NCBI GenBank assembly: GCA_025594325.1
Contig: JANHCV010000011.1
Coordinates: 62,001 to 126,000, forward strand
Direction of reading: 5' to 3'
DNA: 64,000 nucleotides
Origin: Blastocladiella emersonii ATCC 22665
Taxonomy: Eukaryota > Fungi > Blastocladiomycota
The position numbers were made by a program, and so were the translations under genes. This document shows, piece after piece, positions 4,388-64,000 of this stretch. Position 1 is the stretch's first letter. Every line of letters starts with the position of its first letter. The notes under the pieces are model-generated. The model was given only the letters and a program-made list of their open reading frames with translations. It searched no databases and was not told the DNA's origin.

Positions 4388-5135
4388 ATTAAGGAACGCT
4401 AGCAAGGTTAATATATGACTACCTGTTGTGATGCTCTTGCTGGCCAAAATGAGAGCGCGCAGCCAAAACGAGCAACTCAATTTACTCAGCTGTTATTTCA
4501 TGATTCGCAGTGTGGTGGGGGGAGTATCCTGAGGTGTTTAAGAACTTGGCACACCGTGTGGGCTTTGGTTCAAATTGCAGACACGCCAGCCGTTATTTGT
4601 GTGCACTAAACGCTGTGTAGCGCTTGCTAAGGGTCTGGGCCTTTGAGTGGTTCTCTATGACGCACGTAGCTCCCCCAGTAGCCCCAGCTACAACAAGAGG
4701 CAGCCCACTGTAGCCTGGTGAGCCTTGTCAAACAAAGCCCTTTCTGCACTCCAATGCCAGCAGCGCGGGCCAGCCATAGGGGGTTGCCAGTGCTGTGTAT
4801 GGGCAGTGGCGCGCTGCATACCGTATCTTGTATGGCTAAAAATATGCTTGGTGCCAAGATCCGCATTGAAAAATGGAGTGATTGCAATTCCTACAATGCA
4901 ACAAGTTATTGACGATGGATTTCCCACCATAGATGACGCGCCTGAAACCCGCTTTGCCCAAATGCAGATCTTTAGCCCATAGACGCCGGCCGGAAGGGCC
5001 ATCTGTGGCCCCGACTTAGCTTCTTGAAACGGGCGCCGCCGCACAGCGCAAAACTCACCTCAGCCCCAGCTCAATTTTTCAATTTTTCATTTCACCTCGC
5101 TCGCGCTCACTGCTGTTCCCCTCTCCCCGCCAAAA

Positions 5136-5446
5136 ATGTCGACATGTAATTCTGCTCACTACAACGTCCATGACTCTATGAAATCTCATGAACGTACTCT
5201 GCTTGATATGTAGACGTACCACACACGTGCGGAGGCATGTGCAAAAGCACAGACTTCGAGGTGAGCGTCCGCTACATGCAGGACAACGACTTCTACGACA
5301 CCAACAAGGAGCGCCGCTTCGAGCTATACCAGCTAGCGGCCCAGCTGCTTGGGTATCGCAGCTGCACGCCGCTTCCCCTGTGCCTCGAGCTCTACGTCAA
5401 GCATCTGTTCCCTGACAACCACTACGTCGGTTTCGTCCCGCGCTAG
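5136..5446 (+). CDS. Small spliced gene (80 aa) inside piggyBac, P2X7-ballast-like motif
   Basis: Exon 1 5136-5145 ATGTCGACAT, intron 5146-5213 (GTAATT..TAG) and exon 2 5214-5446 join in frame: MSTYVPHTCGGMCKSTDFEV...ERRFELYQLAAQLLGYRSCTPLPLCLELYVKHLFPDNHYVGFVPR*. Strong C/G3 codon bias. The family call comes from remembered consensus only. Confidence 0.7.
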
Positions 5447-5491
5447 CCATACACCGTTTGCATGGATACAGCTCAACTACTTGCAGTTATA

Positions 5492-7977
5492 TTACCCTCG
5501 AAAATGGCTTAGAGTTCCCTGGTGAGCGATGAGAAAGCACGCCTCGCAGTAGTACAGGTTGCACGGCATGCACACATGATACAAGCGCACGCAGCTCAAG
5601 TGGTTTTGCGTGCCAAACTCACGCTTTTTCGTACCCTGCATCTTGTACACGGTCTTGCCCGCGTCGTTGGCGAGGAAGTTGCCGTTGCAGAGGAAGCAGG
5701 AGCGGCGGTGCGCGGTCTTGACTGGAGCGTGGGCCAGGAAAGTGCAGGCAAGCGCCTTCACAAGCCGCTTGTACGCCGCCCTGTTGGCCGCGCGGATGAC
5801 GACTTGTGTGAGACCCGCTTCGGGGAGAAGCACGCTGCTCGGCCGCGTGTTGCTGGAGGCCAAGGTGAACTTGACGCCGCTGCCCATGAACTGGGGCACC
5901 TTGCCGTCTGCGAGGCTCGCCTCAAGCAACAGTAACGTCAGCTGCAGCATGAGCTGTTCGAGGAATTTGAAATGGCTGAGCGGCGGGTCCTGGCCATTGG
6001 TGCACAACTGCTTCCAGCGCTTGCGGTACAGGATGTACGCGTTGGTGAGCATTGTGTCGAGCGCGAAGTGGAACATGGCCTTCCACCACTTGACTGACTT
6101 GAAGTGGCGCTGGTAGTACAAGCGCAGCTGGTCCTGGCGGTCAACGCCGCCCACCCGCGCGTTGTAGTCAACAACAAGCTGGTGGGCGCAGAGAGCGACG
6201 CGCTCCTTCTTGCCCTGGCGCACGATCTTGACACAGTCGTTGGGAGTGTGGCGGGTGGAGATAAACGAGATGGACTGGTTGTCCATCCAGGACAGCGCGA
6301 GAATGGAGCCCTGCACACCGGCGGTTGTGTACGTGGCCTTGCACGCCTTGAGCGTGCCGCGTGGCGCCTTGCCATTGATCTTGAGCGCCTCGTCGGGGAA
6401 GCCCTTGCAGTTGGACTGCGCCGTACCGACAACGTATGTGCGCGCGTCAAGCAGCTTGATGGCGAGCGCCGGCGAGATGAAGAAGTTGTTGCACACAACG
6501 GTGTGGTACTTGCCGAGGCAACCAGCGCCGTCCACGAGCGAGTAGACGACGTTGCTCCCAAGCCCAAGGCCTGGCCAGTCGCGCTGCTTGTTCTTGCCCG
6601 TGTACAGCTAGGTAACCCATCTTGGGGCACGCAAGGGCCCGCACCTTGAGACCCCACTTGATGGGCTTCGCGGGGAGGTACTGGATCAGCGTTGTGCGAC
6701 CACAGAACGAGACCAGCACCTTGTCAACGGACAGAAACTCGCCAATCTTGAAGACAGCGCGCAGCGCCTTGTTGACGTAGAGCATGAACTTGACAATCTT
6801 GAACTCGCGGCGCTCAAACGCGGGTGCGTTGGGGCCGGGTGCACTCTTGTTGTTGCACAGGTGCAGGTTGGCAAGGATGAACTTGAAGCGGTCGCGCGAC
6901 ATGACTGTGGCGAACCACGGCATAGACGTAGGCGAGTCCATGGCCCAGTACTGCTGCACGTTGTTCTTCTGGACCGAGTTCATGCCGATCTTGATGGCGA
7001 TCCAGCGCAGCATCTTGTGCTGCGTGACGGGCTCAAACTCAGCGTGACAAAGAGATGCGTATAGATTGGTCTCTTCACACATGATGCACAGCGCCATCCT
7101 GCCAAGCGTCGTGTTGTTGAAGATGAAGAGGAAGCAGTTGATTGGGGTAATGAGCTCAGGGTCCTTGGCGGGCATGGTTGTGGGTTGCGGCGGCTTGCCA
7201 ATGTACAGCCGGCAAGGGGCGTCTGCTGCAGGAGGTGCGCCGTTGCCAGCCGTTGCTGTGGAGGGCGTTGGCTTGCCAAGGGACAAGTCAAAGTTGGGGC
7301 CCTCGTTGTTGCGGACTGGCGCGGCTGGATTGTCAAAGGTCAGGACGCGCCACTTGAGGACGAGCTTAGGGTTGTCACCGAGGACAAATTTGAGCCACCT
7401 GCGCTACTCTTCTTGCCCGTTGCCTTGGCCATCATCTTGGGCGCAGGCATGGGCGCAGGCGCTGGTGCTGGCGCCTGCTCAGCTTCTACGTGACTCGGTT
7501 CGAGTGAGTGTGGAGCGATGGGGCGTAGAACAGTATGAGCAACGGACGTTGTTTGTGTTTGTCCTCCTTGTCAGAATCGTCCGCAAGCTTGCACATGAAC
7601 TCACCGTTGCTTGACTTGGCCACGTCGCTGGCTTCCAGATCCTCAAACGCCACCGCATCCACCTCATCAGCGGACGACTCTGCGTTGAGGTCGTTGTCGC
7701 CAGCGCCGTCTGAGTCAGAAGGGACAGCAGCGCGGGCGGGTTTACGTTGAGCGGCGGCGGTTGCAGGAGCGGGAGCACATTGAGCAGCGGCAGGGGGCTT
7801 AGGTTGTGCATTGACGCGGCGGCGCTTGTTGCTTGCCAACGGCGTGGTAGGAGCAGAGTCGGATGGCAAAGGTGTTGGTGCAGAGCGCTTGGCAACGCGG
7901 GCCAACGCCCGAGTTGAAGGCAAGGGCGCGTCTGCGGCGGCCGCGCGCTGAGGCGGGCTCTTCTTTCTTGATCCCAT
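5492..7977 (-). pseudogene. piggyBac transposase, frameshifted
   Basis: Motifs MSRDRF, FLSVD(K)VL..FCGR, KPIKWGLKV, YTGK (shifted frame), C(N)NFF (D to N), YNARVGGVDRQDQ and a C-terminal Cys/His cluster CFLC..C..YHVCMPCNLYYCEACF..H. Frameshift near 6605. Probable 62-nt intron at 7486-7547 (GTCCGT..CTCAC..TAG). Confidence 0.88.
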
Positions 7978-9418
7978 GTGAAGTGTCTAGCGTCTAAGAT
8001 GGCCCAGGAGACCGTTCTGCAACGGGAGAGCGGGAACGAAGGGAGGCACAGCAGCGGCAAGGCGGCGGGCAGCGGAGTGGGGCCGGGGCCAACTTTGGCC
8101 CCGCCACCCAGAACGCCAACCACTGCGGTTTTCGGCCATTTTCTCGCTCCCCATGCAAGCCACAAGCCTCGTCTTATGCATATCGGATTGAGCGTCTCTG
8201 GGCGCACACGTGAAGCTCAGTCGCGTTGCGGTGTCTCGCACCTGGCTGGAGAACGGCGGGACTTTGTCTCCCAAACGCGCGAACGAGAGCGTCCGACCCC
8301 CTCTCAACACATCAGTTCTAATCAATATAGCTCGTAACTTCACATAATGGTAGAAGGTAATGTAGGGTTCCGCCAGTTAAAGTTTGAGGCAAATCCATGA
8401 AAAGGTGTTGTCATAATGGGCGTTCGCGCCAAGTTCATAACTTTGGCGGCTCCTCACAGCCCAATGACTGGGCGTCGCGCCGCGCCAAAATTACCGGGTA
8501 CTCGTAGATTCAATAGCTAGAAATCCGCTGAGCGAAGATTCGAGAGTGCATTGTAAAAAGTGGTGGAGATATGGGGGTGGTGGTTTGGGGCCAATATTGG
8601 CCCCTCGTCGTCTATGGGTTAACCTGCTCTCCCGCCATGGAGCGCACCCACCTCCTCATGGTGTGAGTGCACAATGGCAAACAAGAAAAAAAAAATGATT
8701 TGTGGTGTGGTGAAGAGAATGCGCCAATTGGTGATTCTATTACTGATCCAGACTACATGACGCATGTGTCTGGATCTCCTTCATTTTCTTTAGACTGGCT
8801 GAGTGAGTTTCTCTCTCTTGTGTTTGGCACTGTTCCACAAATTTAATGAGTCCTCAATTGTCTCGGCCCCATAAACTCTCAGCTCCTCTAAAATGTGTTG
8901 ATTGACGCTCAGCTACTTGGTACACTCCTGCCTTGTGCTCATCTGGAACGCAGCACCATCCACTGCCAATTCTGCCTGCACTGCCGCAGAGTTGCCAATC
9001 CCCCTTCCTGGCCCATCCTCCCCTTGATTTTATTCCTTCTCTACAGAGCAATGACAATGAATGTACGCATGGAGTGAGATGATAAGGGTCATTAGAGAAG
9101 TTGCGGAAGTCGTGGTCCCCAACTTGAGGAGCTGAACGGGAGTGGCTTGAAAATCTCACCGCAATGCACAGCGGACGGGCTGAAAGTGATTGTCCCCGAC
9201 TTGCGACCATCGGAAAAGCGAGGGTCCAAAGTGAGGGTCCCCGACTTGAAACCTGTGGTTTAGCTTGGTTCCCGCTGGTTTTGTGAGGCGAGGGGCGACG
9301 CTGCGGCTGGAGCACGCCGCGCCGACCTCCTCCCCTCTTCAAGGTTCCGCCTACAAAAGCCAGACGTGCCCCGCTCTCCGTCTCCTCTCTCACCACCGCC
9401 CAACGTCCCTCGTTCGCC

Positions 9419-48662: not shown

Positions 48663-51600
48663 CTTTTGCCGCCCACCAAGATGTGTTTTTGCAACTGCCT
48701 GCCTTTAAACCCTCTATTTATTGAAGGAAGCTAGCGTAAGTGTATCTTTCGCCGACACGGCAAGATGTGTGTGTGTTGGGTAAATATGTGCTTTTCTGGA
48801 TTGCAGTGACAGGTTCTATCCAATTGCTTGCAGCACAAACAATACCTACTTCCGCTGTGACGGTTTTTGACCACCGCCTTAATTGGTCGCCTCTCATTCG
48901 CTCCTGTCAGTCATTGTTTCCATCCTGTTGTCATCCAGAACGTCATACAAGAAAGGAATAGGAACCACAGGCATGATCACAGGTGTACCTACTCTGCCAG
49001 CTTCATCAAGGTGGTTGTTGTGCTGCCTTCTTTGCCACTCTCTACTGTTTCATGGAGCAATGCAGCCATCTGAACTGTGGCGCATGTGAATGTGATGCCA
49101 CTGGTGTCTTGTCTTGCACACATGTGTTTGTGCTTGTGTTTGTGTCTGGAACTACTTCAACCAGAGGGGCAATCCGCCTGGTCCTTGTGGAAGATGATCA
49201 TTTATTTTGCCACGTAATACTTGCCCATCCAACCACCCCTGGAACCCTGACCTTTACCCATACCCTGTCTGCCAATTTGGTGCAGTACACTTCCTGCTCC
49301 ATGGCAGGCGCGTGGAGGTAGGCTTTGTGCTTGACAACTGTGTGTGCAAGCTTGCTGCAGGCTTCACTCACTGCCCAGATCCCCCTTGCACAGCTGCACA
49401 TGGCACTGCAAGAATCCCATCTGCAGCTACACGTGACCATCTCATACACAGAAGTCTTGTGCAGCATCAAGACAAGTAAGTGGTGCGATTCCCTTAGCGT
49501 TTGTGGGGTCAGCAAAAAGTGTGGCCACACAACATCCCAGCTCATGCATTGCAACCCGTATGGCATCCATCACCTGCTCAGTGCACTGTCAAACGCAATG
49601 TGCTGTGAAGGTCAATGTTTAAGAGCTGGTTTGTGTAGATTGGCTGGCCTACTTGCACATGGTGGCAGTGATGTGTTAGGTGTTGGCCACAGCTTCCTTA
49701 ATGTTGCAAATGCAATGCTGCAACAGTGTGGTCTCCTGGTGTGCTGCATCAAGTTTTACTGGTGCTGTCAACTTTGGCGTGCCACATTGGGCTCTGCACA
49801 AATGCTTGGTAAGGCTCAAGCCATAGACTTCACACTAAGCAGAGTAGAGGCTTTCCACCTGCCAGTAAAAAAGCTGTGCAGCTCAGATCAGCAGCCATCT
49901 TGGCGGGGCAGCCATTGAGCAACTCAGGCAAGAGGGCAAGCCAAGTGCTGGTAATTGGCAGGGGCAAGGTACGCTCCGCTCCCAAGCAGTTTCAGGTAGT
50001 GGGGCGCGGTTACATAAATGAGTGAGTATATTTTATTGCATTGCGTTGGGAGAGCGACAGCTTCCTGTCCCCACTTCCTCCTTCCAGCTGACTAGAAGAG
50101 TTGCGGAAAGTCCAGTACTGGACTTCAAGCGTTAGCTGGATGAGGGGTGAGCGGCAGCACCGCAATGCACAGGGAGCGGGCCAAAAAAAAAAAAATAAAA
50201 TAAAATAAAATAAAAAAAAAAAAAATAAAAAAAAAAAAATAAAAAAAAATAAAAATAAAAATAAAAATAAAAATAAAAATAAAAAGAAAAATAAAAAAGA
50301 AAAAGAAAAATATAACAATAAAATAAAAATATAAAGGGCCCGCGCGCAACTCGAGTCCCTCACTTTTCTCAGGCAGCCGAGCGCGGTACCAGAGTTTGAG
50401 AGCAAACCTCAGCTTCGTTCCCACTAATTCTTCAGCCGCTCGCAGCCCTTGATGGCTGGTGTTCCATGCCGCGACTCGTTTGTGCATGTTCTCAGCAGTA
50501 GGCTGAGTTTCTCCCAAACTGAATTCGGCTTGAAGCTGGGCTATCAGTAAACTCAACTTTGTGCTGTTCTCCACGTGATGCTCCCGCCTCCGACTCCAGC
50601 TACAACCTCAAAGCTACGACCCCTTGTTCTCCAAATTTGATTGTAACCCTGACTGTCCAACTTCCGGCAATATCTTTGGCTCTCCCTAAGAAAAAAATTC
50701 TGACACTACTCTCTTCCCGCTCTGACCACCAGTACTCCAGTTCTCTCTGTTGCTGAGCCCTCCAATATCCGCCCTTCTACCTCCGCATTTCCAACGCTTC
50801 TGGCTACTACTCAGTGCATTAAAGCTCCAGCTTGGACGGTTTCGCGCCTCTGACTCCACGACCAGCTTGATTTGGCCGCGAGGCTCTGAACAGGACGGTG
50901 GTGGCATAGCGGGTGGCGCAGCAGGGTGGTGGCGCAGCAGTGGGAGACGCGTCACCAACTGACTGCTCCAATCTCTGCCTCATGCACTCTGACTCCAACT
51001 CGAGCTCTAGCGCTCCAACTCCATGCATTAGTTTCCACTGCCTCTGATGAAAATTCCTATACTGTTCGTATGACTAGGCGATCTGCTGAGTCAGTTTTGA
51101 GGTGAGTGGCGTGCTGGAGTGGAAGCGCACCAATGTCTCCCACTGCTGCACCTGGCTGCAAGACATTAACCATCGCGAGATACGCCGCGCTTTGACTAAT
51201 CTGAAAGAGATCCTTGACTTTGAATGAGTTGATCTTGTCCGCAATTCCACGTGGTCTGAGCTGGTCAACGGCGACTCACAACCTTGGAACTGGTGCAATA
51301 GTTGGCGCACAAGGGAAACCGACAGCCAGCCATGAACGTTCAAACTGATGCCAAAGTTGGACGCGAAGGGTGGGTCGCGCTGGACACGGCATCCGCAGGC
51401 CTATAGAGTGCTGTAAGTTGGAGTGGGGACGCCATTGGGTGTCAATCAAAACCCCGTTTTCAGGCAGGTAAGGTGCCACGTGAGCGGCAGCGCAGGTTGC
51501 AGCCCCACCCGCGTGCGAAAATCAGCTCCCCTTCGCTGAGCAACGCAGCTTCAGCGCTGGGACTTTTTTGGTGGGTGAAATAAATGCTTGGCAATCATTT

Positions 51601-52236
51601 TATTAAACAAACCTGTAACTCGCACACTTGGTTGAAGCCAGCTAAGTAAAAATGCAGCAAGGTGATGGCGCAACAAGCACCTTCACTTGCGCGGCAACTT
51701 CCTGCTTTCTTCGCAGCTCAAAAACGGGGTTATGATTGACACCCATTGCCACGTTGCACTAACTAAAACCCAGACTGGAAATATATTTTTTCTTGGCACA
51801 CATGAGTAGAGGGTATATCCTGGTGATGGAGTAACATCTAGTGCCCTTGCGTTTGGATGAGGAGGTTCTGGTTAAATTACAGCTATGCAGAAATTCCTGG
51901 AATTGGCAGGAACTTTCTTAGAAGTCAGTCCTTTTGGTAGCTCAATTCTTCTCCCTGAGCATTTTATTTTCGTTCTTTGCACTGACCATCTGCCTCTCAC
52001 CGCTCTCTGCCTGCTTGCCCCCAGTCATCCAAGTTCCGCTCCTCCCCTCTCTCAAGACCACGTGCGGAAAGGCTCCCCCATGTTGGGGAATCGGACAAAA
52101 ACAAATCCGCTACAGCGTTTCTATCCCTACAGCAGGTGCTTGCTCTTGACCGCGCTCTTTGACGCGACCTTTTGTGTTCAGATAACTTCAAAATCTTATA
52201 CTATCTATATAATGCTAAATAGTTCCCAGAACGCAG

Positions 52237-52308
52237 GCCGCCTTAGCTCAGTGGTAGAGCGTTGCTCTCGTAAAGCAAAGGCCGGGTGTTCGATCCTCCC
52301 AGGCGGCA
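52237..52308 (+). tRNA. tRNA-Thr(CGT), mirror copy
   Basis: Reverse complement of 12577-12648. Confidence 0.94.
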
Positions 52309-52661
52309 ACGTTTTGCCGAACCCCTCGGGGTATACCTTGGTTGAGTTTGCAGGGAAAGGTGAGTATTCTTGTCAGCCACGGGAGGTCCTGAAAGAAAAA
52401 GGGAATCACTCTTGGCGCCTGTTTAGTTGATGTTGGGTGCCACGTCAGATCCAAACTGTAGGAAAAGCAATGGTTGGGGGGGGGGAGGGCTTGGCAGCGC
52501 CAGCCAGCTTTGTGCAAAAAGGTGATGATAATGACCCACCAAGGTTGGCAGGACCGGCTGCAGCAGTTGTGGATGCGCCCTTTTACCAGCAACAGGACTG
52601 ATTGGCTAGCGTGCTAGCATGGAGAGGAGCAGTAGGAGCCTCCTGTGGTGGTTTCAACAAT

Positions 52662-55600
52662 AGAGGAGTTGCGGAAGTCGTGGTCCCCAACTTGAAACCC
52701 GGGTTTTGGGTCACGTGACCGCCCAAAACTGGTTTTCACCGCGCCAGATCGTGGCGACCCGGACCTGGACCTTGAGCTTCCCGCTCGCCTCTCCACCCCC
52801 GCACCCCTAATAAAACAAAATGGCAGCTGATGGAGCTCTCGCACTTGGTGAAATGGACCTCGACCTTGACCTCAAGGACCTAGAAGCTCTCTGCGACCTG
52901 CTTGAGGTCTTGCAGCTCATGCTGCAGCTGCGCGGCCTTGTTCAACTTCACGGACAGCGTTGAGCAGAGCAGCTTCAGCTCCTGTACGAGCACCAACTCG
53001 CGGTCAATATCGAGAACCGCGACGCCTTCTACGCGATCAGGGCGCGCAATTGCACTCGCTTTCGCGGCCGCTTCGACCTGCGCCGGTTCACCCCTGAGGA
53101 CTGCTTCTATCAGTTCCGCCTTTTCCCCCAACACATCGTCTACCTCGCCCAGGTCGTCTTCCCCGAGCCCAAGGTGATCCTTCCCAGCAAACGTCTCGAC
53201 CGCGTGGAAGCGATCTGCCTGATCCAGCGCCGACTTGCGCACCCAGGTACTCTCATTGACCTCGAGGCCTTCTTCCCGTACGACGAGTCTCGACTCTCGC
53301 GCATCCTCAACGACCTGTTCCTCGAGTTCCACGACCGCTGGGATCACCTGCTGGACTTCAACCCAGGCGCCTTCACGCCCGCCATGCTTGAGGACACGGC
53401 CGCGTCCATCCAGGCCAAGGGCGCGCCGCAGAACAATTGTATTGGCTTTATCGATGGCACTCTGCGCAAGATCGCGCGACCTGACGATCACGACATGCAA
53501 CACGCGGTATACAGCACGTACAAGCAGATTCACTCACTCAAGTTTTACTCGCTGGTCGCGTCAAACGGCCTCACGCTTGACTTTAGTGAGGCGCAGCTGG
53601 GTCCAACAAACGACCGTTGCGTACTCGCCAAACGCCGACTCCAGGAGGCACTGCGCATGCTTCCGCCTACGCCGCTTGGAATCCAGTACATCGTCTTTGG
53701 CGACAAGGGATACACCGCGAGCGATGTGGTATGCACGCCATTCCCTGGTGCCCGCGAGAACTTGACCCAGGAGCAGGGCGCGTACAACTTGTCCCTCTCT
53801 CGTGTCCGCGTCACGGTCAAGTGGTCGTTTGGCATGACAACAAACCAGTTTCTGAACCTCGACAACCACCGCCTGCTGCGTGTCCGCCACTCGCCCATCG
53901 CTTTATACCATCGCGTCGCCGTGATCCTCACAAACATGCGGAACTGCATCTATCCCAACGAGATCTCGCAGTACTTTAATCGCCGCCCGCCGCTGCTCGA
54001 GCACTACGTGCAGGGCATCTACCACGTCGTCCATCGCGTTGCTGCTTGAAGGAGCGCGTTGGTTTTGTTCATGTCACTCTTGCATAAATTTGGTTCTGAA
54101 TAGCTCACGCTCGCCCAGATCGAGAAGGCGTGTCCCTCCAGTCATGAGCACTCAGGGCGACCTCGAACAACGCGGAGCGTGATGACGCTCGGCGGAGAAG
54201 ACGCGCGAAAAACGCGTGAAGACGCGTCGCGATGATCAGCCACGTGTGGTGCAAGGCACGCGAGACACGGCTCACCTTTGACTTACCTGGCGAGAGCTGT
54301 GGTGAGAAAGCATAATCTGACAAAAGGGAATCGCGTATACTGGTATGCAGGGTACACGGGGAGGGAATGAAGGTCACAAATGAGGCGGTGGAAAAATGGA
54401 AGGGGGCGCCGCGCGTTTGTGCTCGCCTTACTCGCGGCGGCCGTTCTGGCTGTTGCGCGAGCGGACGCGCTGCGCCACCTCGTTGATGAGCGACACTGCG
54501 GTGCCCATGGCCCAGTTGAGCTGCTGGTCAAAGTTGGCGCCCATACCGCCGTGCATGGCGGCGGCGGGCGTCGCGAGGTCGGGCGACACAACGCCCATAC
54601 GAGGCGTTGCGGGAACAGCGGGGACAGCGCCGTACGAGAAGAAGTCGTGGCCGGCGGGCGTCAGCACAAGCGACTGGTTCGGGCGGGGCGCGAGGTCAAG
54701 GGCGTTGTGGCGGGGCGAAGCAGCGATGGCCTCGTCCACCTCCTTGCGCGTGAGCTAGCGACGTACCGTTTCGTTGTCAGTCGTGGGCATGCCAAGGCGA
54801 GGCGAGGGAGGAAACGCACGTAGGAGAGACGCTGCGCCTCAAGGCCGGCGGCGTCCTTGGTCTGCTTCTTGGCCGCGACCTCCTTCTTGTACTCCTTGTA
54901 GTTGGCCTTGGCCGCGGCGATGGCGCCGCGCAGCTCGAATGCGAGGCGCTACGCGTTGCGTTGCACGTCAGTGAGAGCGGCGACCTTGGCGGAGCCGAAA
55001 TAACGTACATCATTCGCAGTGAGGATGTCCGAGGCAGCCCCGCTCTCGCCGACCCGCGCCTTGTTGGCATTGGCGCGCAGCTGGGCGCCGTTGAGGACGG
55101 CGTACACGTTGTTGATCAGCGTTTTCTGGGTCACCTTCTTCGTGATGCCGTTGTTGGTGCCGTCCGGCCCATGGCCTTGTTGACGGCACACACAACCTGG
55201 ACCTTGACGATCTCCTTGTTGCGTGGGAGCTGCTTGATGTGGTCGATGGCGGCGCGCAGGATGACGCGCTCCTTGTGCGACTGCGCGGCGATGTGCGGGA
55301 ACTTGCCCTGCACCCTGGTGGCCGTCGACTTCTTGGGCGCGGCCGTGGCCGTGGCCGTGGTTGGCGCCTGCAGGACAGGCGCCTCGTTGGGCGCGGTGGC
55401 AGTTGCAGGAACGCCGCGGCGGCGGCGCTTGTTGGGCGTCGGGGCTGCGGCCTGCGTAGTAGTCATGGCGAACGAGGGACGTTGGGCGGTGGTGAGAGAG
55501 GAGACGGAGAGCGGGGCACGTCTGGCTTTTGTAGGCGGAACCTTGAAGAGGGGAGGAGGTCGGCGCGGCGTGCTCCAGCCGCAGCGTCGCCCCTCGCCTC

Positions 55601-55791
55601 ACAAAACCAGCGGGAACCAAGCTAAACCACAGGTTTCAAGTCGGGGACCCTCACTTTGGACCCTCGCTTTTCCGATGGTCGCAAGTCGGGGACAATCACT
55701 TTCAGCCCGTCCGCTGTGCATTGCGGTGAGATTTTCAAGCCACTCCCGTTCAGCTCCTCAAGTTGGGGACCACGACTTCCGCAACTTCTCT
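52662..55791. mobile_element. Pangu-like transposon, mirror copy
   Basis: Reverse complement of 9094-12223. Confidence 0.92.
52820..54049 (+). pseudogene. Harbinger-type transposase, mirror copy
   Basis: ATG at 52820, TGA at 52971-52973, same motifs. Confidence 0.9.
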
Positions 55792-56907
55792 AATGACCCT
55801 TATCATCTCACTCCATACGTACATTCATTGTCATTGCTCTGTAGAGAAGGAATAAAATCAAGGGGAGGATGGGCCAGGAAGGGGGATTGGCAACTCTGCG
55901 GCAGTGCAGGCAGAATTGGCAGTGGATGGTGCTGCGTTCCAGATGAGCACAAGGCAGGAGTGTACCAAGTAGCTGAGCGTCAATCAACACATTTTAGAGG
56001 AGCTGAGAGTTTATGGGGCCGAGACAATTGAGGACTCATTAAATTTGTGGAACAGTGCCAAACACAAGAGAGAGAAACTCACTCAGCCAGTCTAAAGAAA
56101 ATGAAGGAGATCCAGACACATGCGTCATGTAGTCTGGATCAGTAATAGAATCACCAATTGGCGCATTCTCTTCACCACACCACAAATCATTTTTTTTTTC
56201 TTGTTTGCCATTGTGCACTCACACCATGAGGAGGTGGGTGCGCTCCATGGCGGGAGAGCAGGTTAACCCATAGACGACGAGGGGCCAATATTGGCCCCAA
56301 ACCACCACCCCCATATCTCCACCACTTTTTACAATGCACTCTCGAATCTTCGCTCAGCGGATTTCTAGCTATTGAATCTACGAGTACCCGGTAATTTTGG
56401 CGCGGCGCGACGCCCAGTCATTGGGCTGTGAGGAGCCGCCAAAGTTATGAACTTGGCGCGAACGCCCATTATGACAACACCTTTTCATGGATTTGCCTCA
56501 AACTTTAACTGGCGGAACCCTACATTACCTTCTACCATTATGTGAAGTTACGAGCTATATTGATTAGAACTGATGTGTTGAGAGGGGGTCGGACGCTCTC
56601 GTTCGCGCGTTTGGGAGACAAAGTCCCGCCGTTCTCCAGCCAGGTGCGAGACACCGCAACGCGACTGAGCTTCACGTGTGCGCCCAGAGACGCTCAATCC
56701 GATATGCATAAGACGAGGCTTGTGGCTTGCATGGGGAGCGAGAAAATGGCCGAAAACCGCAGTGGTTGGCGTTCTGGGTGGCGGGGCCAAAGTTGGCCCC
56801 GGCCCCACTCCGCTGCCCGCCGCCTTGCCGCTGCTGTGCCTCCCTTCGTTCCCGCTCTCCCGTTGCAGAACGGTCTCCTGGGCCATCTTAGACGCTAGAC
56901 ACTTCAC

Positions 56908-59393
56908 ATGGGATCAAGAAAGAAGAGCCCGCCTCAGCGCGCGGCCGCCGCAGACGCGCCCTTGCCTTCAACTCGGGCGTTGGCCCGCGTTGCCAAGCGC
57001 TCTGCACCAACACCTTTGCCATCCGACTCTGCTCCTACCACGCCGTTGGCAAGCAACAAGCGCCGCCGCGTCAATGCACAACCTAAGCCCCCTGCCGCTG
57101 CTCAATGTGCTCCCGCTCCTGCAACCGCCGCCGCTCAACGTAAACCCGCCCGCGCTGCTGTCCCTTCTGACTCAGACGGCGCTGGCGACAACGACCTCAA
57201 CGCAGAGTCGTCCGCTGATGAGGTGGATGCGGTGGCGTTTGAGGATCTGGAAGCCAGCGACGTGGCCAAGTCAAGCAACAGTGAGTTCATGTGCAAGCTT
57301 GCGGACGATTCTGACAAGGAGGACAAACACAAACAACGTCCGTTGCTCATACTGTTCTACGCCCCATCGCTCCACACTCACTCGAACCGAGTCACGTAGA
57401 AGCTGAGCAGGCGCCAGCACCAGCGCCTGCGCCCATGCCTGCGCCCAAGATGATGGCCAAGGCAACGGGCAAGAAGAGTAGCGCAGGTGGCTCAAATTTG
57501 TCCTCGGTGACAACCCTAAGCTCGTCCTCAAGTGGCGCGTCCTGACCTTTGACAATCCAGCCGCGCCAGTCCGCAACAACGAGGGCCCCAACTTTGACTT
57601 GTCCCTTGGCAAGCCAACGCCCTCCACAGCAACGGCTGGCAACGGCGCACCTCCTGCAGCAGACGCCCCTTGCCGGCTGTACATTGGCAAGCCGCCGCAA
57701 CCCACAACCATGCCCGCCAAGGACCCTGAGCTCATTACCCCAATCAACTGCTTCCTCTTCATCTTCAACAACACGACGCTTGGCAGGATGGCGCTGTGCA
57801 TCATGTGTGAAGAGACCAATCTATACGCATCTCTTTGTCACGCTGAGTTTGAGCCCGTCACGCAGCACAAGATGCTGCGCTGGATCGCCATCAAGATCGG
57901 CATGAACTCGGTCCAGAAGAACAACGTGCAGCAGTACTGGGCCATGGACTCGCCTACGTCTATGCCGTGGTTCGCCACAGTCATGTCGCGCGACCGCTTC
58001 AAGTTCATCCTTGCCAACCTGCACCTGTGCAACAACAAGAGTGCACCCGGCCCCAACGCACCCGCGTTTGAGCGCCGCGAGTTCAAGATTGTCAAGTTCA
58101 TGCTCTACGTCAACAAGGCGCTGCGCGCTGTCTTCAAGATTGGCGAGTTTCTGTCCGTTGACAAGGTGCTGGTCTCGTTCTGTGGTCGCACAACGCTGAT
58201 CCAGTACCTCCCCGCGAAGCCCATCAAGTGGGGTCTCAAGGTGCGGGCCCTTGCGTGCCCCAAGATGGGTTACCTAGCTGTACACGGGCAAGAACAAGCA
58301 GCGCGACTGGCCAGGCCTTGGGCTTGGGAGCAACGTCGTCTACTCGCTCGTGGACGGCGCTGGTTGCCTCAGCAAGTACCACACCGTTGTGTGCAACAAC
58401 TTCTTCATCTCGCCGGCGCTCGCCATCAAGCTGCTTGACGCGCGCACATACGTTGTCGGTACGGCGCAGTCCAACTGCAAGGGCTTCCCCGACGAGGCGC
58501 TCAAGATCAATGGCAAGGCGCCACGCGGCACGCTCAAGGCGTGCAAGGCCACGTACACAACCGCCGGTGTGCAGGGCTCCATTCTCGCGCTGTCCTGGAT
58601 GGACAACCAGTCCATCTCGTTTATCTCCACCCGCCACACTCCCAACGACTGTGTCAAGATCGTGCGCCAGGGCAAGAAGGAGCGCGTCGCTCTCTGCGCC
58701 CACCAGCTTGTTGTTGACTACAACGCGCGGGTGGGCGGCGTTGACCGCCAGGACCAGCTGCGCTTGTACTACCAGCGCCACTTCAAGTCAGTCAAGTGGT
58801 GGAAGGCCATGTTCCACTTCGCGCTCGACACAATGCTCACCAACGCGTACATCCTGTACCGCAAGCGCTGGAAGCAGTTGTGCACCAATGGCCAGGACCC
58901 GCCGCTCAGCCATTTCAAATTCCTCGAACAGCTCATGCTGCAGCTGACGTTACTGTTGCTTGAGGCGAGCCTCGCAGACGGCAAGGTGCCCCAGTTCATG
59001 GGCAGCGGCGTCAAGTTCACCTTGGCCTCCAGCAACACGCGGCCGAGCAGCGTGCTTCTCCCCGAAGCGGGTCTCACACAAGTCGTCATCCGCGCGGCCA
59101 ACAGGGCGGCGTACAAGCGGCTTGTGAAGGCGCTTGCCTGCACTTTCCTGGCCCACGCTCCAGTCAAGACCGCGCACCGCCGCTCCTGCTTCCTCTGCAA
59201 CGGCAACTTCCTCGCCAACGACGCGGGCAAGACCGTGTACAAGATGCAGGGTACGAAAAAGCGTGAGTTTGGCACGCAAAACCACTTGAGCTGCGTGCGC
59301 TTGTATCATGTGTGCATGCCGTGCAACCTGTACTACTGCGAGGCGTGCTTTCTCATCGCTCACCAGGGAACTCTAAGCCATTTTCGAGGGTAA
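56908..59393 (+). pseudogene. piggyBac transposase, mirror copy
   Basis: Same lesions as the left copy; differs at two nucleotides. Confidence 0.88.
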
Positions 59394-59438
59394 TATAACT
59401 GCAAGTAGTTGAGCTGTATCCATGCAAACGGTGTATGG

Positions 59439-59749
59439 CTAGCGCGGGACGAAACCGACGTAGTGGTTGTCAGGGAACAGATGCTTGACGTAGAGCTCGA
59501 GGCACAGGGGAAGCGGCGTGCAGCTGCGATACCCAAGCAGCTGGGCCGCTAGCTGGTATAGCTCGAAGCGGCGCTCCTTGTTGGTGTCGTAGAAGTCGTT
59601 GTCCTGCATGTAGCGGACGCTCACCTCGAAGTCTGTGCTTTTGCACATGCCTCCGCACGTGTGTGGTACGTCTACATATCAAGCAGAGTACGTTCATGAG
59701 ATTTCATAGAGTCATGGACGTTGTAGTGAGCAGAATTACATGTCGACAT
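59439..59749 (-). CDS. Small spliced gene inside piggyBac, mirror copy
   Basis: Reverse complement of 5136-5446. Confidence 0.7.
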
Positions 59750-60497
59750 TTTTGGCGGGGAGAGGGGAACAGCAGTGAGCGCGAGCGAGGTGAAATGAAA
59801 AATTGAAAAATTGAGCTGGGGCTGAGGTGAGTTTTGCGCTGTGCGGCGGCGCCCGTTTCAAGAAGCTAAGTCGGGGCCACAGATGGCCCTTCCGGCCGGC
59901 GTCTATGGGCTAAAGATCTGCATTTGGGCAAAGCGGGTTTCAGGCGCGTCATCTATGGTGGGAAATCCATCGTCAATAACTTGTTGCATTGTAGGAATTG
60001 CAATCACTCCATTTTTCAATGCGGATCTTGGCACCAAGCATATTTTTAGCCATACAAGATACGGTATGCAGCGCGCCACTGCCCATACACAGCACTGGCA
60101 ACCCCCTATGGCTGGCCCGCGCTGCTGGCATTGGAGTGCAGAAAGGGCTTTGTTTGACAAGGCTCACCAGGCTACAGTGGGCTGCCTCTTGTTGTAGCTG
60201 GGGCTACTGGGGGAGCTACGTGCGTCATAGAGAACCACTCAAAGGCCCAGACCCTTAGCAAGCGCTACACAGCGTTTAGTGCACACAAATAACGGCTGGC
60301 GTGTCTGCAATTTGAACCAAAGCCCACACGGTGTGCCAAGTTCTTAAACACCTCAGGATACTCCCCCCACCACACTGCGAATCATGAAATAACAGCTGAG
60401 TAAATTGAGTTGCTCGTTTTGGCTGCGCGCTCTCATTTTGGCCAGCAAGAGCATCACAACAGGTAGTCATATATTAACCTTGCTAGCGTTCCTTAAT

Positions 60498-60570
60498 GTC
60501 ACCGTGGTGTAGTGGTTATCACGCCTGTCTCACACACAGGCGGTCCCCAGTTCGATCCTGGGCAGTGACA
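60498..60570 (+). tRNA. tRNA-Val(CAC), mirror copy
   Basis: Reverse complement of 4315-4387. Confidence 0.92.
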
Positions 60571-62967
60571 TGATGTAACTCTTATTGGAGACTACGGACT
60601 TTTTGTTCATATGTCAAAGTGGGGCAACAAAGCGTCACATTTAAACACCTTTTTTGTGCGATAATATCTGTCTATCTCCTATCGACGCCAACTCTGAAAA
60701 TGGGACACTGTGGCAGCGGCTGCCATGTACTTTGTTGCAGAAATAGGACAACTTGGAAAGCGGGGCTTTGCCCAAGCCATAGGCGCTGCGACCTTGAAGC
60801 TCTCGTTTCGTCACGTTACAGTCACACTTTTCACTGATGACATCACTCCCCATGTCGCGTTGCGCCACTTCGCTTCTGTCACGTGCGCGTTCTGCATGTG
60901 CGCCGTGACGTCTTGGATTGTTGAGCCGCCACTCGCTCGCACTCTGTTCTCGCTCCCTGCTGTTCAACCACATACATCCTTGTTCTAGTAGCTCATGGTG
61001 CAAACTGACCAGGTAGGCTGTTCAAAGTGTAACGGAGCGCCCAGAGAGGGCCGAATACACAATGACTAGCAAACAAGGATGTATGTGGTTGAACAGCAGG
61101 GAGCGAGAACAGAGTGCATCACCAAACCGTGCCCCAGCCATTTGAAGTGGATCCACCCTGGATCCAGCCGTGGACTGCATGGACCTCGGGGGGATGTGGA
61201 TCGCAATATTACTCTTCTGGATCAAGCGTGGATCCAGCTTGGGCGAGTTCGATCCACCCACAAACTGCACGGACCTCTCATGTGGATCAAGCTGTTGGTC
61301 AATGTGGATCTCCAGCTTGATCGTGCAGTGGATTCACTTTGTCTCAGCGTGGATCACGCCAGGGATCAAGGTGTTGCTCACGGCTCAATATATCCAGATC
61401 CAGGTCGCGGTCCATTGATGATCCCAGGGCTCAAACCACGCGATCTATCTGCGAACCGAGAGCGACACAGGTAAACAGCTGGCGGGTAAGAAGATGAGGG
61501 AGGATGACGGAGGATGAGGGAGGATGAGGGAGGAAAACCAGTGGCAGTGATCCTTGCGGCCAGCTTGATGACGATCAAGCGGGATCTTGCCGCATATGGC
61601 CTACGATGCGAGGAGAGATCATTGCGAGCGCAAAGTCAGTCAGCAGCAAGGCAAGAACAAGTACCATGACGCCTCGAGTGCACCTTGGACCCGTCCTCAC
61701 ACCCGCAGCTGGCTCAGTTGGCAACATTGGCCTCAACGATTGGTTTGTGACGTTGCTCTCGATTGTACTAGACAGGAGGGAACCATCTGCGTAAGTTGGA
61801 GACCGTGATGGGTGAGGCTGAGTCGCATACCTTGGCCATGAACAAGTACTGTGTGCTTGAGGGTAACGCTGACCAGTTGATGGGCGAGGGCAGCAGCAGC
61901 TTGTTGCAGTAAAGTGAGGCTATGGGCGATGGGGCGGAGACAAGTGAGCGATGAGTCAGGCGAAGAGTCCAATTGACGCTAGCACGCAAGCCACGTCCCC
62001 GAGACCCGGGCCAACAACACGTGCAAGACTGCTTGGGAGCTTGAAGCTCGGCGGTGCCTGCACGCAGCGCGAGTCGCGCCAAGAACGCAAAGGAGAAGAA
62101 CCGTACCGTGTGGACTTGAGCGCGTTGTGAGCGAGTCAATGCGAAGGGCAACGGCGCAACCCTTGTCACTGCGACATGGCGTACTCGGCGCGCTAGTCAT
62201 GGTGTCAGCAAACATGTTAGTCTTGGCTTGTGAGGGCCGAGTTGCACACCGCGTACCATGTCGCGATCTTGGTCAGTATTGACGCAAACACGTTGCCGCG
62301 GACCCCCACAAGCGCTGCTTCAGCTTGAGGTGCTTTTTGAAGGCTAGAAAGCAGGGCAAAGCGGTCGTGGCGTGGGGCACGTCAGTGAGCGAACGGACAG
62401 CTGGCGCTGAAGGCGTGGGAATGCGGCGTGACCCTTGAGAGCGGCGGGCGCAAGTCCTGTCAACGTGTGCAGGGCGTGTTGGCGGAGTTGAGGTGTGACT
62501 GTGGATGCACATCGCAAGGGAGTACAAGGTGCGGAGAAGGCGAGAGACGCGTACCGTGGAAGTCACCGAGCGGCGCGGGCCCATGGCGGCGTTGGTTGGA
62601 TGCGATGAGGTACATGGAGGCTAAGGGGTGATAGTGCAGGCGGTTGCGCTAGGTCGCAAATTACTTCTGAGAGGATCACCGCCGGCCTCGCCTATCTGAC
62701 GTTCTAGCCGGACCACTGACTCGCCCAGCCTACTCACCTACTGCTGAGACAAAGTGTGCAACGCACACACCCCCTAGTGCTGTGTTGGTGAAGCATTGCA
62801 GGTCAAGTCCCTGCCTGCAACGTTTGTCACTGCTCTATTGAGTGACGGAGCTGAAACACCTCAATAAATTGAAAAGAAATGCCAATATTTAGCTGGCTAA
62901 ACATCAGAGAGTGTGAAAAGCAATCGTTCCAAATGCAAACAACACGCTATAAACTGAATAAAATGTC

Positions 62968-63039
62968 AGGTCCTACTGAGATTCGAACTCAGGTTACCAG
63001 ATTCAGAGTCTGGTGTGATGACCGCTACACTATAGGACC
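62968..63039 (-). tRNA. tRNA-Gln(CTG), mirror copy
   Basis: Reverse complement of 1846-1917. Confidence 0.95.
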
Positions 63040-64000
63040 TCTGTTTAAATGCGTGAACTGCTGAAGCTAAGCTGCCCGGAACATGGACTCGGCTCAACCC
63101 AGACTCCAGTCATGAATCATCGCCGAGTGGAAAGCGCCTTGTTTGACTAGGCTCACTGGGATCTCACATTAAAATCACCGCTAATCCCTCTATTTGGCCG
63201 CCTGCTCAGAAAAAAGCCTGAGCACCACTGCTCCACTGCTTGCACGCACCTTGCGTTCACCTCTCCGTTCACTTTCCTCGGCCCAGCTGCCACAAAAATA
63301 TAAATATAAATATAAATATAAATATAAATATAAATATAAACGCAGCTCTACGCAGCAAAGTACAATAAAATGTATTGACCCAACTGGACCAGCGCTCCCT
63401 TGGCACCTTGAACAAAGGTCGCCGTCCGCTTGTACAGGCGTCAGCTGTGCAGCGACGGTCCTAAACTACAACAGGGTCGCGTCCGCATGGATGGAGATGA
63501 TGTCAGGCGAAAGGTAACGCGGACTAGAGATATGCAAATGGGAAGTACTTACTCCCACGCCTATGTGAGGGCTGCTGTGTACACGCTTGCACTCCCCTGC
63601 GCTTTGCCCGCTCCCCCGCGTCCGTCAGACCGCGCAGCACTCTTTCGAACACCAAAGCAATGATTAACGTTGCTACCTACAGCACCGCTACGTTTACTCT
63701 TAAAAGCGGAACGCGCGCCACGGCCCTTATCATTCCATTGATGATACGCCTGATGCGTCCTCCAAGCTCAAGGAGGTCAGCGTCCCTGGCAAAGACAGCG
63801 CGCTACGACGTCCATAAACGACGTATATCGTTGTTGCGTCCAGCACAGCTGAAAGGCAGTTTGCGCCCTGCGTAATACTGTCAGTGCTGAGAAGCGTTAA
63901 GGCAAACCGCCAACTGCGTGGTTCATGCGAGCCCTGACCACAAAACAACCGCATACACACTCACTACCTCGGCTGTTTAGGCCTCAAAGTAGCGATAAAA

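What the first reader, a model, noticed from the sequence alone, without database searches (positions are those of the whole stretch)
4976..8618. piggyBac carrying a second, convergent, intact spliced gene with a P2X7-ballast-like motif
Seen: inside the TIRs, tail-to-tail with the transposase (45 bp between stops), is an 80-aa gene whose 68-nt intron splices in frame and which has no lesion, while the transposase is broken. Its C-terminal pattern R..LY....LG....PLP.C....VK..FP...Y.GF resembles, from memory, the P2X7 cytoplasmic ballast / nanor-like consensus (R..AY...LG...R..LP.C...IR..FP...Y.GF). I recall related small proteins accompanying Kolobok transposases (KolX). Typical piggyBac elements encode only the transposase, so a two-gene piggyBac with this accessory protein may be undescribed (inference).
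Basis: partly seen in the sequence, partly recalled or inferred. Interest (0 to 1): 0.78.

Follow-up and report, generated by a model that had tools for sequence, protein, structure and literature searches.

The report
Dead piggyBac with small ballast-like gene
This fungal jumping gene is a dead piggyBac element that also carries a small second gene related to the tail of the animal P2X7 receptor; such piggyBac elements were briefly reported in 2022, so this is a new fungal example, not a new kind.

Summary
Window 4976-8618 is a piggyBac element with 13-bp inverted ends and TTAG/TTAA flanks. A small plus-strand gene lies tail-to-tail with the transposase, 45 bp between the stops.

A profile of the small protein and its in-genome paralog finds about 40 small relatives. 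Twelve of the 35 I aligned match Pfam P2RX7_C, only its last ~50 positions. The family profile's best solved-structure hits are all P2X7, residues 538-596.

The transposase is dead: an unavoidable frameshift at 6608-6612, and Asn in place of the second catalytic Asp.

The novelty claim fails. Kojima and Bao 2022 (PMC9587614) already note piggyBac families encoding a KolX-C-terminal-like protein without most of its cysteines.

What this adds:
- the same convergent two-gene layout in a complete Catenaria anguillulae piggyBac and three metagenome contigs;
- a host paralog fused to ankyrin repeats.

Cautions:
- the window's two copies are one insertion inside an inverted duplication of at least 14.7 kb, so dN/dS cannot be measured;
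- an open 0.24-kb gene beside a broken 2.4-kb one is expected by chance;
- residue 50 is Cys where 30 of 35 relatives have Arg;
- the 68-nt intron is plausible but unverified.

The parts
4972..4975 (.). Left target-site copy, TTAG (degenerate TTAA)
   Evidence: all eight sister-family copies have TTAA here
4976..4988 (+). Left terminal inverted repeat, CCCATAGACGCCG
   Evidence: pair I4; aligned with the sister-family ends
5136..5145 (+). Putative exon 1 of the small gene (ATG plus 7 nt). The ATG and its CCAAAAATGT context are kept in all eight sister-family copies
   Evidence: splicing not verified
5146..5213 (+). Putative 68-nt GT..AG intron. If it is not spliced out, the ATG at 5136 opens a 25-codon ORF ending at the TAG at 5211-5213
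   Evidence: read directly; no RNA data
5214..5446 (+). Exon 2 of the small gene: a KolX-C-terminal-like 'mini-ballast' protein (HTCGGMC ... RRFELY ... PLPLC ... FPDNHYVGF), stop at 5444-5446
5447..5491 (.). 45-bp spacer between the two convergent stop codons
5492..6607 (-). C-terminal part of the transposase (371 codons, one frame). It matches DDE_Tnp_1_7 positions 204-349 and includes a Cys-rich tail. The second catalytic Asp is replaced by Asn
6608..6612 (-). Frameshift site inside the DDE domain: a TAG in the downstream frame directly follows ...KMGYL in the upstream frame. There is no space for an intron
   Evidence: the Catenaria relative reads straight through this point
6612..7403 (-). 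Middle part of the transposase (264 codons, a second frame), matching DDE_Tnp_1_7 positions 1-169
7486..7977 (-). N-terminal acidic, low-complexity ORF of the transposase (163 aa, a third frame). Its join to the next part could be an intron or a second frameshift
8606..8618 (-). Right terminal inverted repeat
8619..8622 (.). Right target-site copy, TTAA
56267..59909 (-). Second copy of the same insertion (2 nt differences, at the positions matching 6514 and 7605). It lies in the other arm of an inverted segmental duplication of at least 14.7 kb

Best explanation
This is a single, inactivated insertion of an autonomous-type piggyBac transposon in an early-diverging fungus. It was later copied along with its surroundings by a large inverted segmental duplication.

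Its piggyBac lineage carries a small accessory gene besides the transposase. The gene sits next to the TIR at the transposase's 3' side and points towards the transposase. The protein, 69-80 aa, is a cut-down relative of the KolX / nanor / P2X7 'ballast' domain.

What it keeps:
- the last conserved block, (L)PxC-x3-(I/V)(K/R)-x2-FP-x3-Y-x-G-F;
- the R-x3-Y pair that aligns with R546 and Y550 of P2X7;
- a short N-terminal H/C-x-C-x3-C motif.

What it lacks: the whole middle cysteine cluster.

Inferred: it folds as a three-helix unit, and the N-terminal Cys/His plus the PxC cysteine may hold one zinc ion. It would act in trans as a cofactor or regulator of transposition. This inference rests on the same kind of protein travelling with both piggyBac and Kolobok, two unrelated transposase superfamilies that both insert at TTAA.

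In this particular copy the transposase is dead. The small gene is still open, probably only because it is short.
For: piggyBac identity: TIRs and TTAA, and DDE_Tnp_1_7 matches at E 2.5e-28 and 6.3e-24.

One insertion only: the flanks of the two copies are identical for at least 500 bp and the mirror identity runs to about 14.8 kb. No other piggyBac transposase was found in the genome.

Homology of the small protein:
- A profile of the window protein plus its paralog finds 45 proteins at E<=1e-3 among 1.84 billion.
- 12 of the 35 I aligned match PF20478 P2RX7_C. P0023 scores 28.3 bits against a 23.5-bit cut-off. P0002, P0003 and P0013 match profile positions 141-192 or 165-192 below the cut-off.
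- The family profiles' top PDB hits are all P2X7, E 0.06-0.23, residues 538-596.

Conserved two-gene layout (small gene convergent with a piggyBac transposase):
- Catenaria anguillulae L025: TTAA on both sides, TIR CCCTTTGG, transposase E 1.9e-66.
- Metagenome contigs L024, L032 and L036.

Prior literature.

Fold: AF2 model, mean pLDDT 81, three helices.
Against: - The window protein itself gets no Pfam hit, even at E<=1, and no PDB sequence hit.
- The PDB profile hits are only marginal (E 0.06-0.2).
- Foldseek finds nothing. In the wide structural search P2X7 ranks 14th at Z 4.3, which is within the noise.
- No function is known for KolX or for any of these proteins, so the cofactor role, the zinc site and any link to TTAA are inference.
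- Splicing and expression were not tested.
- Residue 50 is Cys where 30 of 35 relatives have Arg, so this copy may already be damaged.
Confidence: 0.82

Rival explanations
1. The small gene has been kept by selection for the host (exapted) while the transposase decays. This is what the reader's contrast between an intact gene and a broken transposase hints at.
For: The ORF is open while the transposase has a frameshift and a catalytic Asp-to-Asn change. The genome also holds a host-type paralog fused to ankyrin repeats, so domestication of this domain has happened in this lineage.
Against: The gene is about 0.24 kb against about 2.4 kb for the transposase. With one or two disabling lesions in the larger gene, the smaller would usually escape by chance. 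Only one independent copy exists, and its duplicate is identical across the gene, so no selection test is possible. A well-conserved Arg is replaced by Cys. The gene still lies inside a transposon in a repeat-rich stretch.
Confidence: 0.08
2. The small gene is a host gene fragment picked up by this one element (transduplication) from the ankyrin-plus-ballast gene on contig 21. On this reading it is not a native piggyBac gene.
For: Its closest relative anywhere is the in-genome paralog L022, at 48% identity and sharing the HTCG motif.
Against: The same small gene sits in the same place and orientation in four other, very divergent piggyBac elements: Catenaria and three metagenome contigs. It was also reported in red-alga and oomycete piggyBac families. 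The start codon context is kept in the sister non-autonomous family. Transfer from transposon to host is therefore the more economical direction.
Confidence: 0.06
3. The ORF is a chance open frame in GC-rich DNA and the motif likeness is coincidental.
For: GC-rich sequence produces many spurious ORFs. The window protein alone has no Pfam hit.
Against: The whole-library profile hits reach E 8e-10. The nearly invariant columns R34, Y38, L45, L53, P54, C56 and P66 are all present in the window protein. Synteny with piggyBac transposases recurs.
Confidence: 0.01

Closest known systems
piggyBac families encoding a KolX-like second protein (piggyBac-2_GrCh_2p, piggyBac-14_PI_2p; Kojima and Bao 2022, Mob DNA 13:24, PMC9587614, Data S6)
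   Same: [quoted passage not shown] By eye, the GrCh protein ends R..AY...LG...IPRC....IRRLWPD....YMGF, the same motif as here.
   Different: Those families come from taxa other than fungi; from the Repbase-style abbreviations I read them as a red alga and an oomycete (not checked). This one is fungal, and its protein is shorter: 69-80 aa against about 175 aa for GrCh. The paper gives one sentence and two sequences, with no gene layout or wider distribution. I did not align the two published sequences with tools, because they exist here only as printed letters without a reference.
KolX of Kol0-lineage Kolobok transposons
   Same: A small accessory protein of a TTAA-targeting DNA transposon, sharing the C-terminal motif. 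One relative found here (P0004, L029) lies convergent, 26 bp from a non-piggyBac gene with weak Mutator-like and SAP matches.
   Different: KolX carries the full ballast domain with seven Zn-binding cysteines. The transposase superfamily is different. I did not confirm that L029 is a Kolobok element.
P2X7 cytoplasmic ballast / nanor (Pfam PF20478 P2RX7_C; the ZCD of Rump et al. 2020, PMC7016195)
   Same: Cysteine cluster 3 is present: (L/I/V)PxC-x3-I(R/K)-x2-(F/Y)P-x3-5-Y-x-G. So are the R546 and Y550 equivalents (R34, Y38) and the F581-P582 equivalents (F65, P66).
   Different: Cluster 2 (LCCRx3GxC) is absent. Cluster 1 is reduced to HxCx3C. About 25 residues lie between the N-terminal cysteine motif and the R..Y pair (read), against about 64 between C482 and R546 in P2X7 by the residue numbering. 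The GDP ligands H547, R574, R578 and K583 are not all matched. It is a free-standing transposon protein, not a receptor tail.

Membership tests
piggyBac superfamily | DDE_Tnp_1_7 (PF13843) transposase | tested here: met
   two pieces match at E 2.5e-28 (profile 1-169) and 6.3e-24 (profile 204-349). They are 40-47% identical to the Catenaria piggyBac ORF.
piggyBac superfamily | TTAA target duplication and short TIRs starting CCC...GGG | tested here: met
   TTAG|CCCATAGACG...CGTCTATGGG|TTAA, with one base of the left TTAA changed. Eight sister copies have TTAA.
piggyBac superfamily | Intact catalytic DDD triad (needed for an active member only) | tested here: not met
   the second Asp is Asn (CNNFF against TDNFF). 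There is also a frameshift at 6608-6612. This is a dead member, not a non-member.
P2RX7_C / ballast ZCD (PF20478) | Score above Pfam's gathering cut-off (23.5 bits) | tested here: not met
   the window protein gets no hit at E<=1. Relatives do: P0023 28.3 bits, P0002 21.7, P0003 17.6; 12 of 35 match at E<=1. All matches cover only the last ~50 of 192 profile positions.
P2RX7_C / ballast ZCD (PF20478) | Cysteine cluster 1, PxWCxCxxC (Rump et al. 2020) | tested here: inconclusive
   The window has HTCGGMC and relatives have C-x3-5-C-x-C. It is a similar but not identical pattern, and only 24 of 35 aligned sequences reach this region.
P2RX7_C / ballast ZCD (PF20478) | Cysteine cluster 2, LCCRx3GxCITT | tested here: not met
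   Absent from the window protein and all close relatives. This agrees with the statement in PMC9587614.
P2RX7_C / ballast ZCD (PF20478) | Cluster 3, (L/I/V)PSC(C/S)x3IRx2(F/Y)Px5Y(S/T)G, together with R546 and Y550 | tested here: met
   Window: PLPLCLELYVKHLFPDNHYVGF and RRFELY. Aligned to P2X7 residues 538-596.
P2RX7_C / ballast ZCD (PF20478) | Binds two zinc ions and GDP/GTP | not testable with these tools
   Needs biochemistry.
piggyBac lineage with a KolX-like second gene (Kojima and Bao 2022) | A small KolX-C-terminal-like ORF lacking most of the conserved cysteines, inside the piggyBac TIRs | tested here: met
   for the window. The same layout is found in L025, L024, L032 and L036.

The most novel reading that the evidence does not exclude
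The 'mini-ballast' protein is a dedicated cofactor shared by the two unrelated transposon superfamilies that insert at TTAA, piggyBac and Kolobok. Its function would be tied to TTAA targeting or to seamless excision and repair at TTAA. The P2X7 receptor tail, nanor and the fungal ankyrin fusion seen here would then all be domestications of this transposon protein, which spans fungi, oomycetes, red algae and animals.
Probability: 0.2. Interest if true: 0.6.

Novelty: new member of a known kind. Interest (0 to 1): 0.35.

Why it matters
piggyBac is a major genome-engineering tool and is normally treated as a one-gene element. A conserved second gene in a natural piggyBac lineage, now seen in fungi with the same layout in several distant elements, points to an accessory factor that nobody has tested.

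It also extends the evidence that the P2X7 ballast domain began as a transposon protein well beyond animals.

The Catenaria element, which has clean TTAA flanks and a DDE domain in a single unbroken ORF, would be a better test object than this dead copy.

Tried and rejected
- Pfam, PDB sequence search, the word-indexed protein search and the ESM Atlas on the window protein alone all gave nothing useful. Only the exhaustive profile search worked.
- Foldseek on the AF2 model found nothing. The wide structural search put P2X7 at rank 14 with Z 4.3, which does not discriminate.
- PF20478 searched against the whole genome found nothing, and its controls were also silent, so that result is uninformative.
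- A word-indexed search with the transposase C-terminal piece returned no hit at E<=1e-10.
- dN/dS is impossible. The two copies are one insertion and are identical across the small gene. The sister family lacks the gene.
- I tested whether the first frame change of the transposase (around 7403-7489) must be a lesion. Many in-frame GT..AG candidates exist, so it may be an intron and I left it open.
- Two low-ranking profile hits (P0038, P0042) are Sel1-repeat proteins, i.e. false positives. I left all five long multi-domain hits (P0008, P0010, P0017, P0038, P0042) out of the alignment; P0008 is a true P2RX7_C protein.
- The joined (spliced) 80-aa model was not searched. Following the operators' note, exon 2 alone was used, by reference (window:5216-5443:+).
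- The two protein sequences printed in the paper's Data S6 were compared by eye only, because they have no reference.
Full report
**What is in the sequence**

Window 4976-8618 is bounded by a 13-bp imperfect inverted repeat, CCCATAGACG(C/A)CG. The flanks are TTAG on the left and TTAA on the right.

On the minus strand, three open stretches in three frames together make a piggyBac transposase:
- 7977-7486, the N-terminal part;
- 7403-6612, which matches Pfam DDE_Tnp_1_7 positions 1-169 (E 2.5e-28);
- 6607-5495, which matches positions 204-349 (E 6.3e-24).

On the plus strand, ORF 5237-5446 extends upstream in frame to 5207. The two stop codons are 45 bp apart.

**Is the transposase really broken?**

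Yes.
- At 6608-6612 the upstream frame reads ...KMGYL. The downstream frame begins, directly after a TAG, with LYTGKNK. No intron can fit there.
- The Catenaria relative reads straight through this point in one ORF.
- The motif holding the second catalytic Asp reads CNNFF, against TDNFF in Catenaria. That this Asp is catalytic rests on established knowledge of piggyBac transposases.
- The earlier frame change at 7403-7489 may be an intron, since many in-frame GT..AG pairs exist. I leave it open.

**How many copies are there?**

Two copies lie in the window, the second at 56267-59909(-). They differ at 2 nt, both C/T. Their flanks are identical, and the mirror identity runs from window position 1 to about 14.8 kb. 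So there is one insertion, later copied by an inverted segmental duplication or an assembly fold-back.

No other piggyBac transposase was found in this 32.7-Mb, 21-contig genome. Earlier notes of this scan call the genome a fungus.

A related non-autonomous family of about 1.87 kb is present:
- it has at least 8 copies, 93-98% alike, each flanked by TTAA;
- it shares 73-80% identity with the two ends of the window element;
- it keeps the CCAAAAATGT start context of the small gene but not the gene itself.

No dN/dS test is possible.

**What is the small protein?**

Alone it matches nothing in Pfam, PDB, the word-indexed protein search or the ESM Atlas. The genome holds one paralog, at 48% identity, on contig 21.

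A profile of the two, run exhaustively over 1.84 billion proteins, gave 45 hits at E<=1e-3. Most are 50-150 aa. They share this pattern:
- an N-terminal C-x3-5-C-x-C;
- NKQ(R/K)RF-x-Y;
- LGY-x2-R-x-PLP-x-C(V/I)-x3-I(K/R)-x2-FPD-x2-3-Y-x-G(F/Y).

I aligned 35 sequences: the window protein, its paralog and 33 hits.
- Twelve match PF20478 P2RX7_C.
- P0023 passes the curated cut-off (28.3 against 23.5 bits).
- The piggyBac-borne P0002, P0003 and P0013 match profile positions 141-192 or 165-192 below the cut-off.
- The family profile's top PDB hits are all P2X7 chains, residues 538-596, at E 0.06-0.23. This holds whether I use all 35 sequences or the seven closest relatives, four of which are the piggyBac-borne proteins.

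In that alignment the nearly invariant R34 and Y38 fall on R546 and Y550. The PxC cysteine falls on C572, and FP on F581-P582. Rump et al. single out these same positions as conserved across ballast domains (PMC7016195). Their cysteine cluster 2 is entirely missing, and cluster 1 is reduced to HxCx3C.

The AF2 model has mean pLDDT 81 and three helices. It gave no Foldseek hit. In the wide structural search, P2X7 residues 479-587 rank only 14th at Z 4.3, though with the highest identity on the list, 18%. Structure neither adds to nor detracts from the case. The homology rests on sequence profiles.

Two weak hits were Sel1-repeat false positives. I left all five long multi-domain hits out of the alignment; one of them, P0008, is a true P2RX7_C protein.

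**Is the gene native to piggyBac?**

I looked up the genomic context of twelve relatives. Six contigs had enough downstream sequence to judge.

| Locus | Source | Small gene | Downstream partner |
|---|---|---|---|
| L025 | Catenaria anguillulae GCA_002102555.1 (species named in PMC6690862) | P0003 | Convergent piggyBac transposase, E 1.9e-66, 40-47% identical to the window's. Complete element of about 4.1 kb with TTAA on both sides, TIR CCCTTTGG/CCCTTTAG and subterminal palindromes |
| L024 | metagenome | P0002 | Convergent piggyBac transposase |
| L032 | metagenome | P0012 | Convergent piggyBac transposase, 15 bp between genes |
| L036 | metagenome | P0013 | Convergent piggyBac transposase |
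| L029 | metagenome | P0004 | Convergent 576-aa protein, 26 bp away, with weak Mutator-like and SAP matches. Possibly Kolobok; not confirmed |
| L035 | metagenome | P0014 | Uninformative |

The two-gene, tail-to-tail layout is therefore a lineage trait, not a one-off capture.

**What is already known**

Kojima and Bao 2022 (Mob DNA 13:24) showed that KolX of Kolobok has the ballast fold and proposed it as the origin of the P2X7 tail and of nanor. [quoted passage not shown] No later paper on this turned up.

This case adds a fungal host, the conserved position and orientation of the gene, a set of about 40 relatives, and a host paralog.

**Functional status here**

The open reading frame is not evidence of selection. 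The gene is a tenth the size of the transposase gene, which carries one sure frameshift. Residue 50 is Cys (TGC), one C-to-T step from the Arg (CGC) found in 30 of 35 relatives. The element as a whole is dead.

The intron model is reasonable:
- The H-x-C-x3-C motif shared with the paralog lies upstream of Met 5237 and downstream of an in-frame TGA at 5204-5206.
- The ATG at 5136 has a good context and is conserved in the sister family.
- Without splicing, that ATG opens a 25-codon ORF that ends exactly at the acceptor TAG.

It remains unverified.

**Mechanism**

Shown: the homology, the gene's placement, and its conservation across distant piggyBac elements.

Inferred: a small three-helix protein, possibly holding one zinc ion through the N-terminal His/Cys and the PxC cysteine. 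It would act in trans with the transposase or on a host pathway. Because both carriers, piggyBac and Kolobok, insert at TTAA (PMC9587614), a role linked to TTAA targeting or repair is the most interesting possibility. I put it at about 20%.

- The joined spliced 80-aa model was not submitted to any tool. Exon 2 was searched by reference.
- The two sequences printed in the paper's supplement were compared by eye only, because they have no reference.
- Nothing here involved human sequence, toxins or animal viruses.

Noticed in passing
window 1-~14780 and ~50100-64000; also G000:C21:1350882-1354103 vs 1397135-1400356 and C3:644607-647731 vs 676003-679127: At least three large inverted duplications, 99.9-100% identical, with spacers of roughly 28-46 kb (about 35 kb in the window). 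They may be real palindromes or long-read assembly fold-backs. Every 'pair' of repeat copies I met in this genome was of this kind.
   Followed up: partly
L022:1516-2349 (-) = G000:C21, and its mirror copy L023: A 277-aa host-type gene with three ankyrin repeats, an acidic/Ser-rich linker and a mini-ballast domain 48% identical to the transposon protein. Its TAA stop falls exactly on the conserved Tyr codon of the final Y-x-G-F motif. It is either a domesticated copy or a decaying one.
   Followed up: partly
L003:1501-3367 (G000:C16) and seven further copies (L004-L010): A non-autonomous piggyBac family of about 1.87 kb, 93-98% alike, all TTAA-flanked, with TIR CCCATAGCCGAC. The copies look young, yet the only piggyBac transposase in the genome is the dead one in this window. 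At C3 the copy directly abuts what looks like another piggyBac end (...TCTATGGG TTAA CCCATAG...).
   Followed up: partly
L025:5767-9852 (Catenaria anguillulae MCFL01000003.1, about 843794-847879): A complete two-gene piggyBac with perfect TTAA flanks and subterminal palindromes GTTGGACG..CGTCCAAC. Its 337-aa DDE ORF has no frameshift. The public annotation calls the small gene and pieces of the transposase as separate hypothetical genes, plus a probably spurious plus-strand ORF at 6509-7042.
   Followed up: partly
window 5363-5365, 6491-6493, 6514, 7605: The changes at conserved sites are C-to-T or G-to-A steps: Arg to Cys in the small protein and catalytic Asp to Asn in the transposase.
   Followed up: partly
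L029:682-2412 (-) and L030: A metagenome element in which a mini-ballast gene (P0004) lies convergent, 26 bp from a 576-aa protein with only weak Mutator-like and SAP matches. It may be a Kolobok-type element with the same tail-to-tail layout.
   Followed up: no
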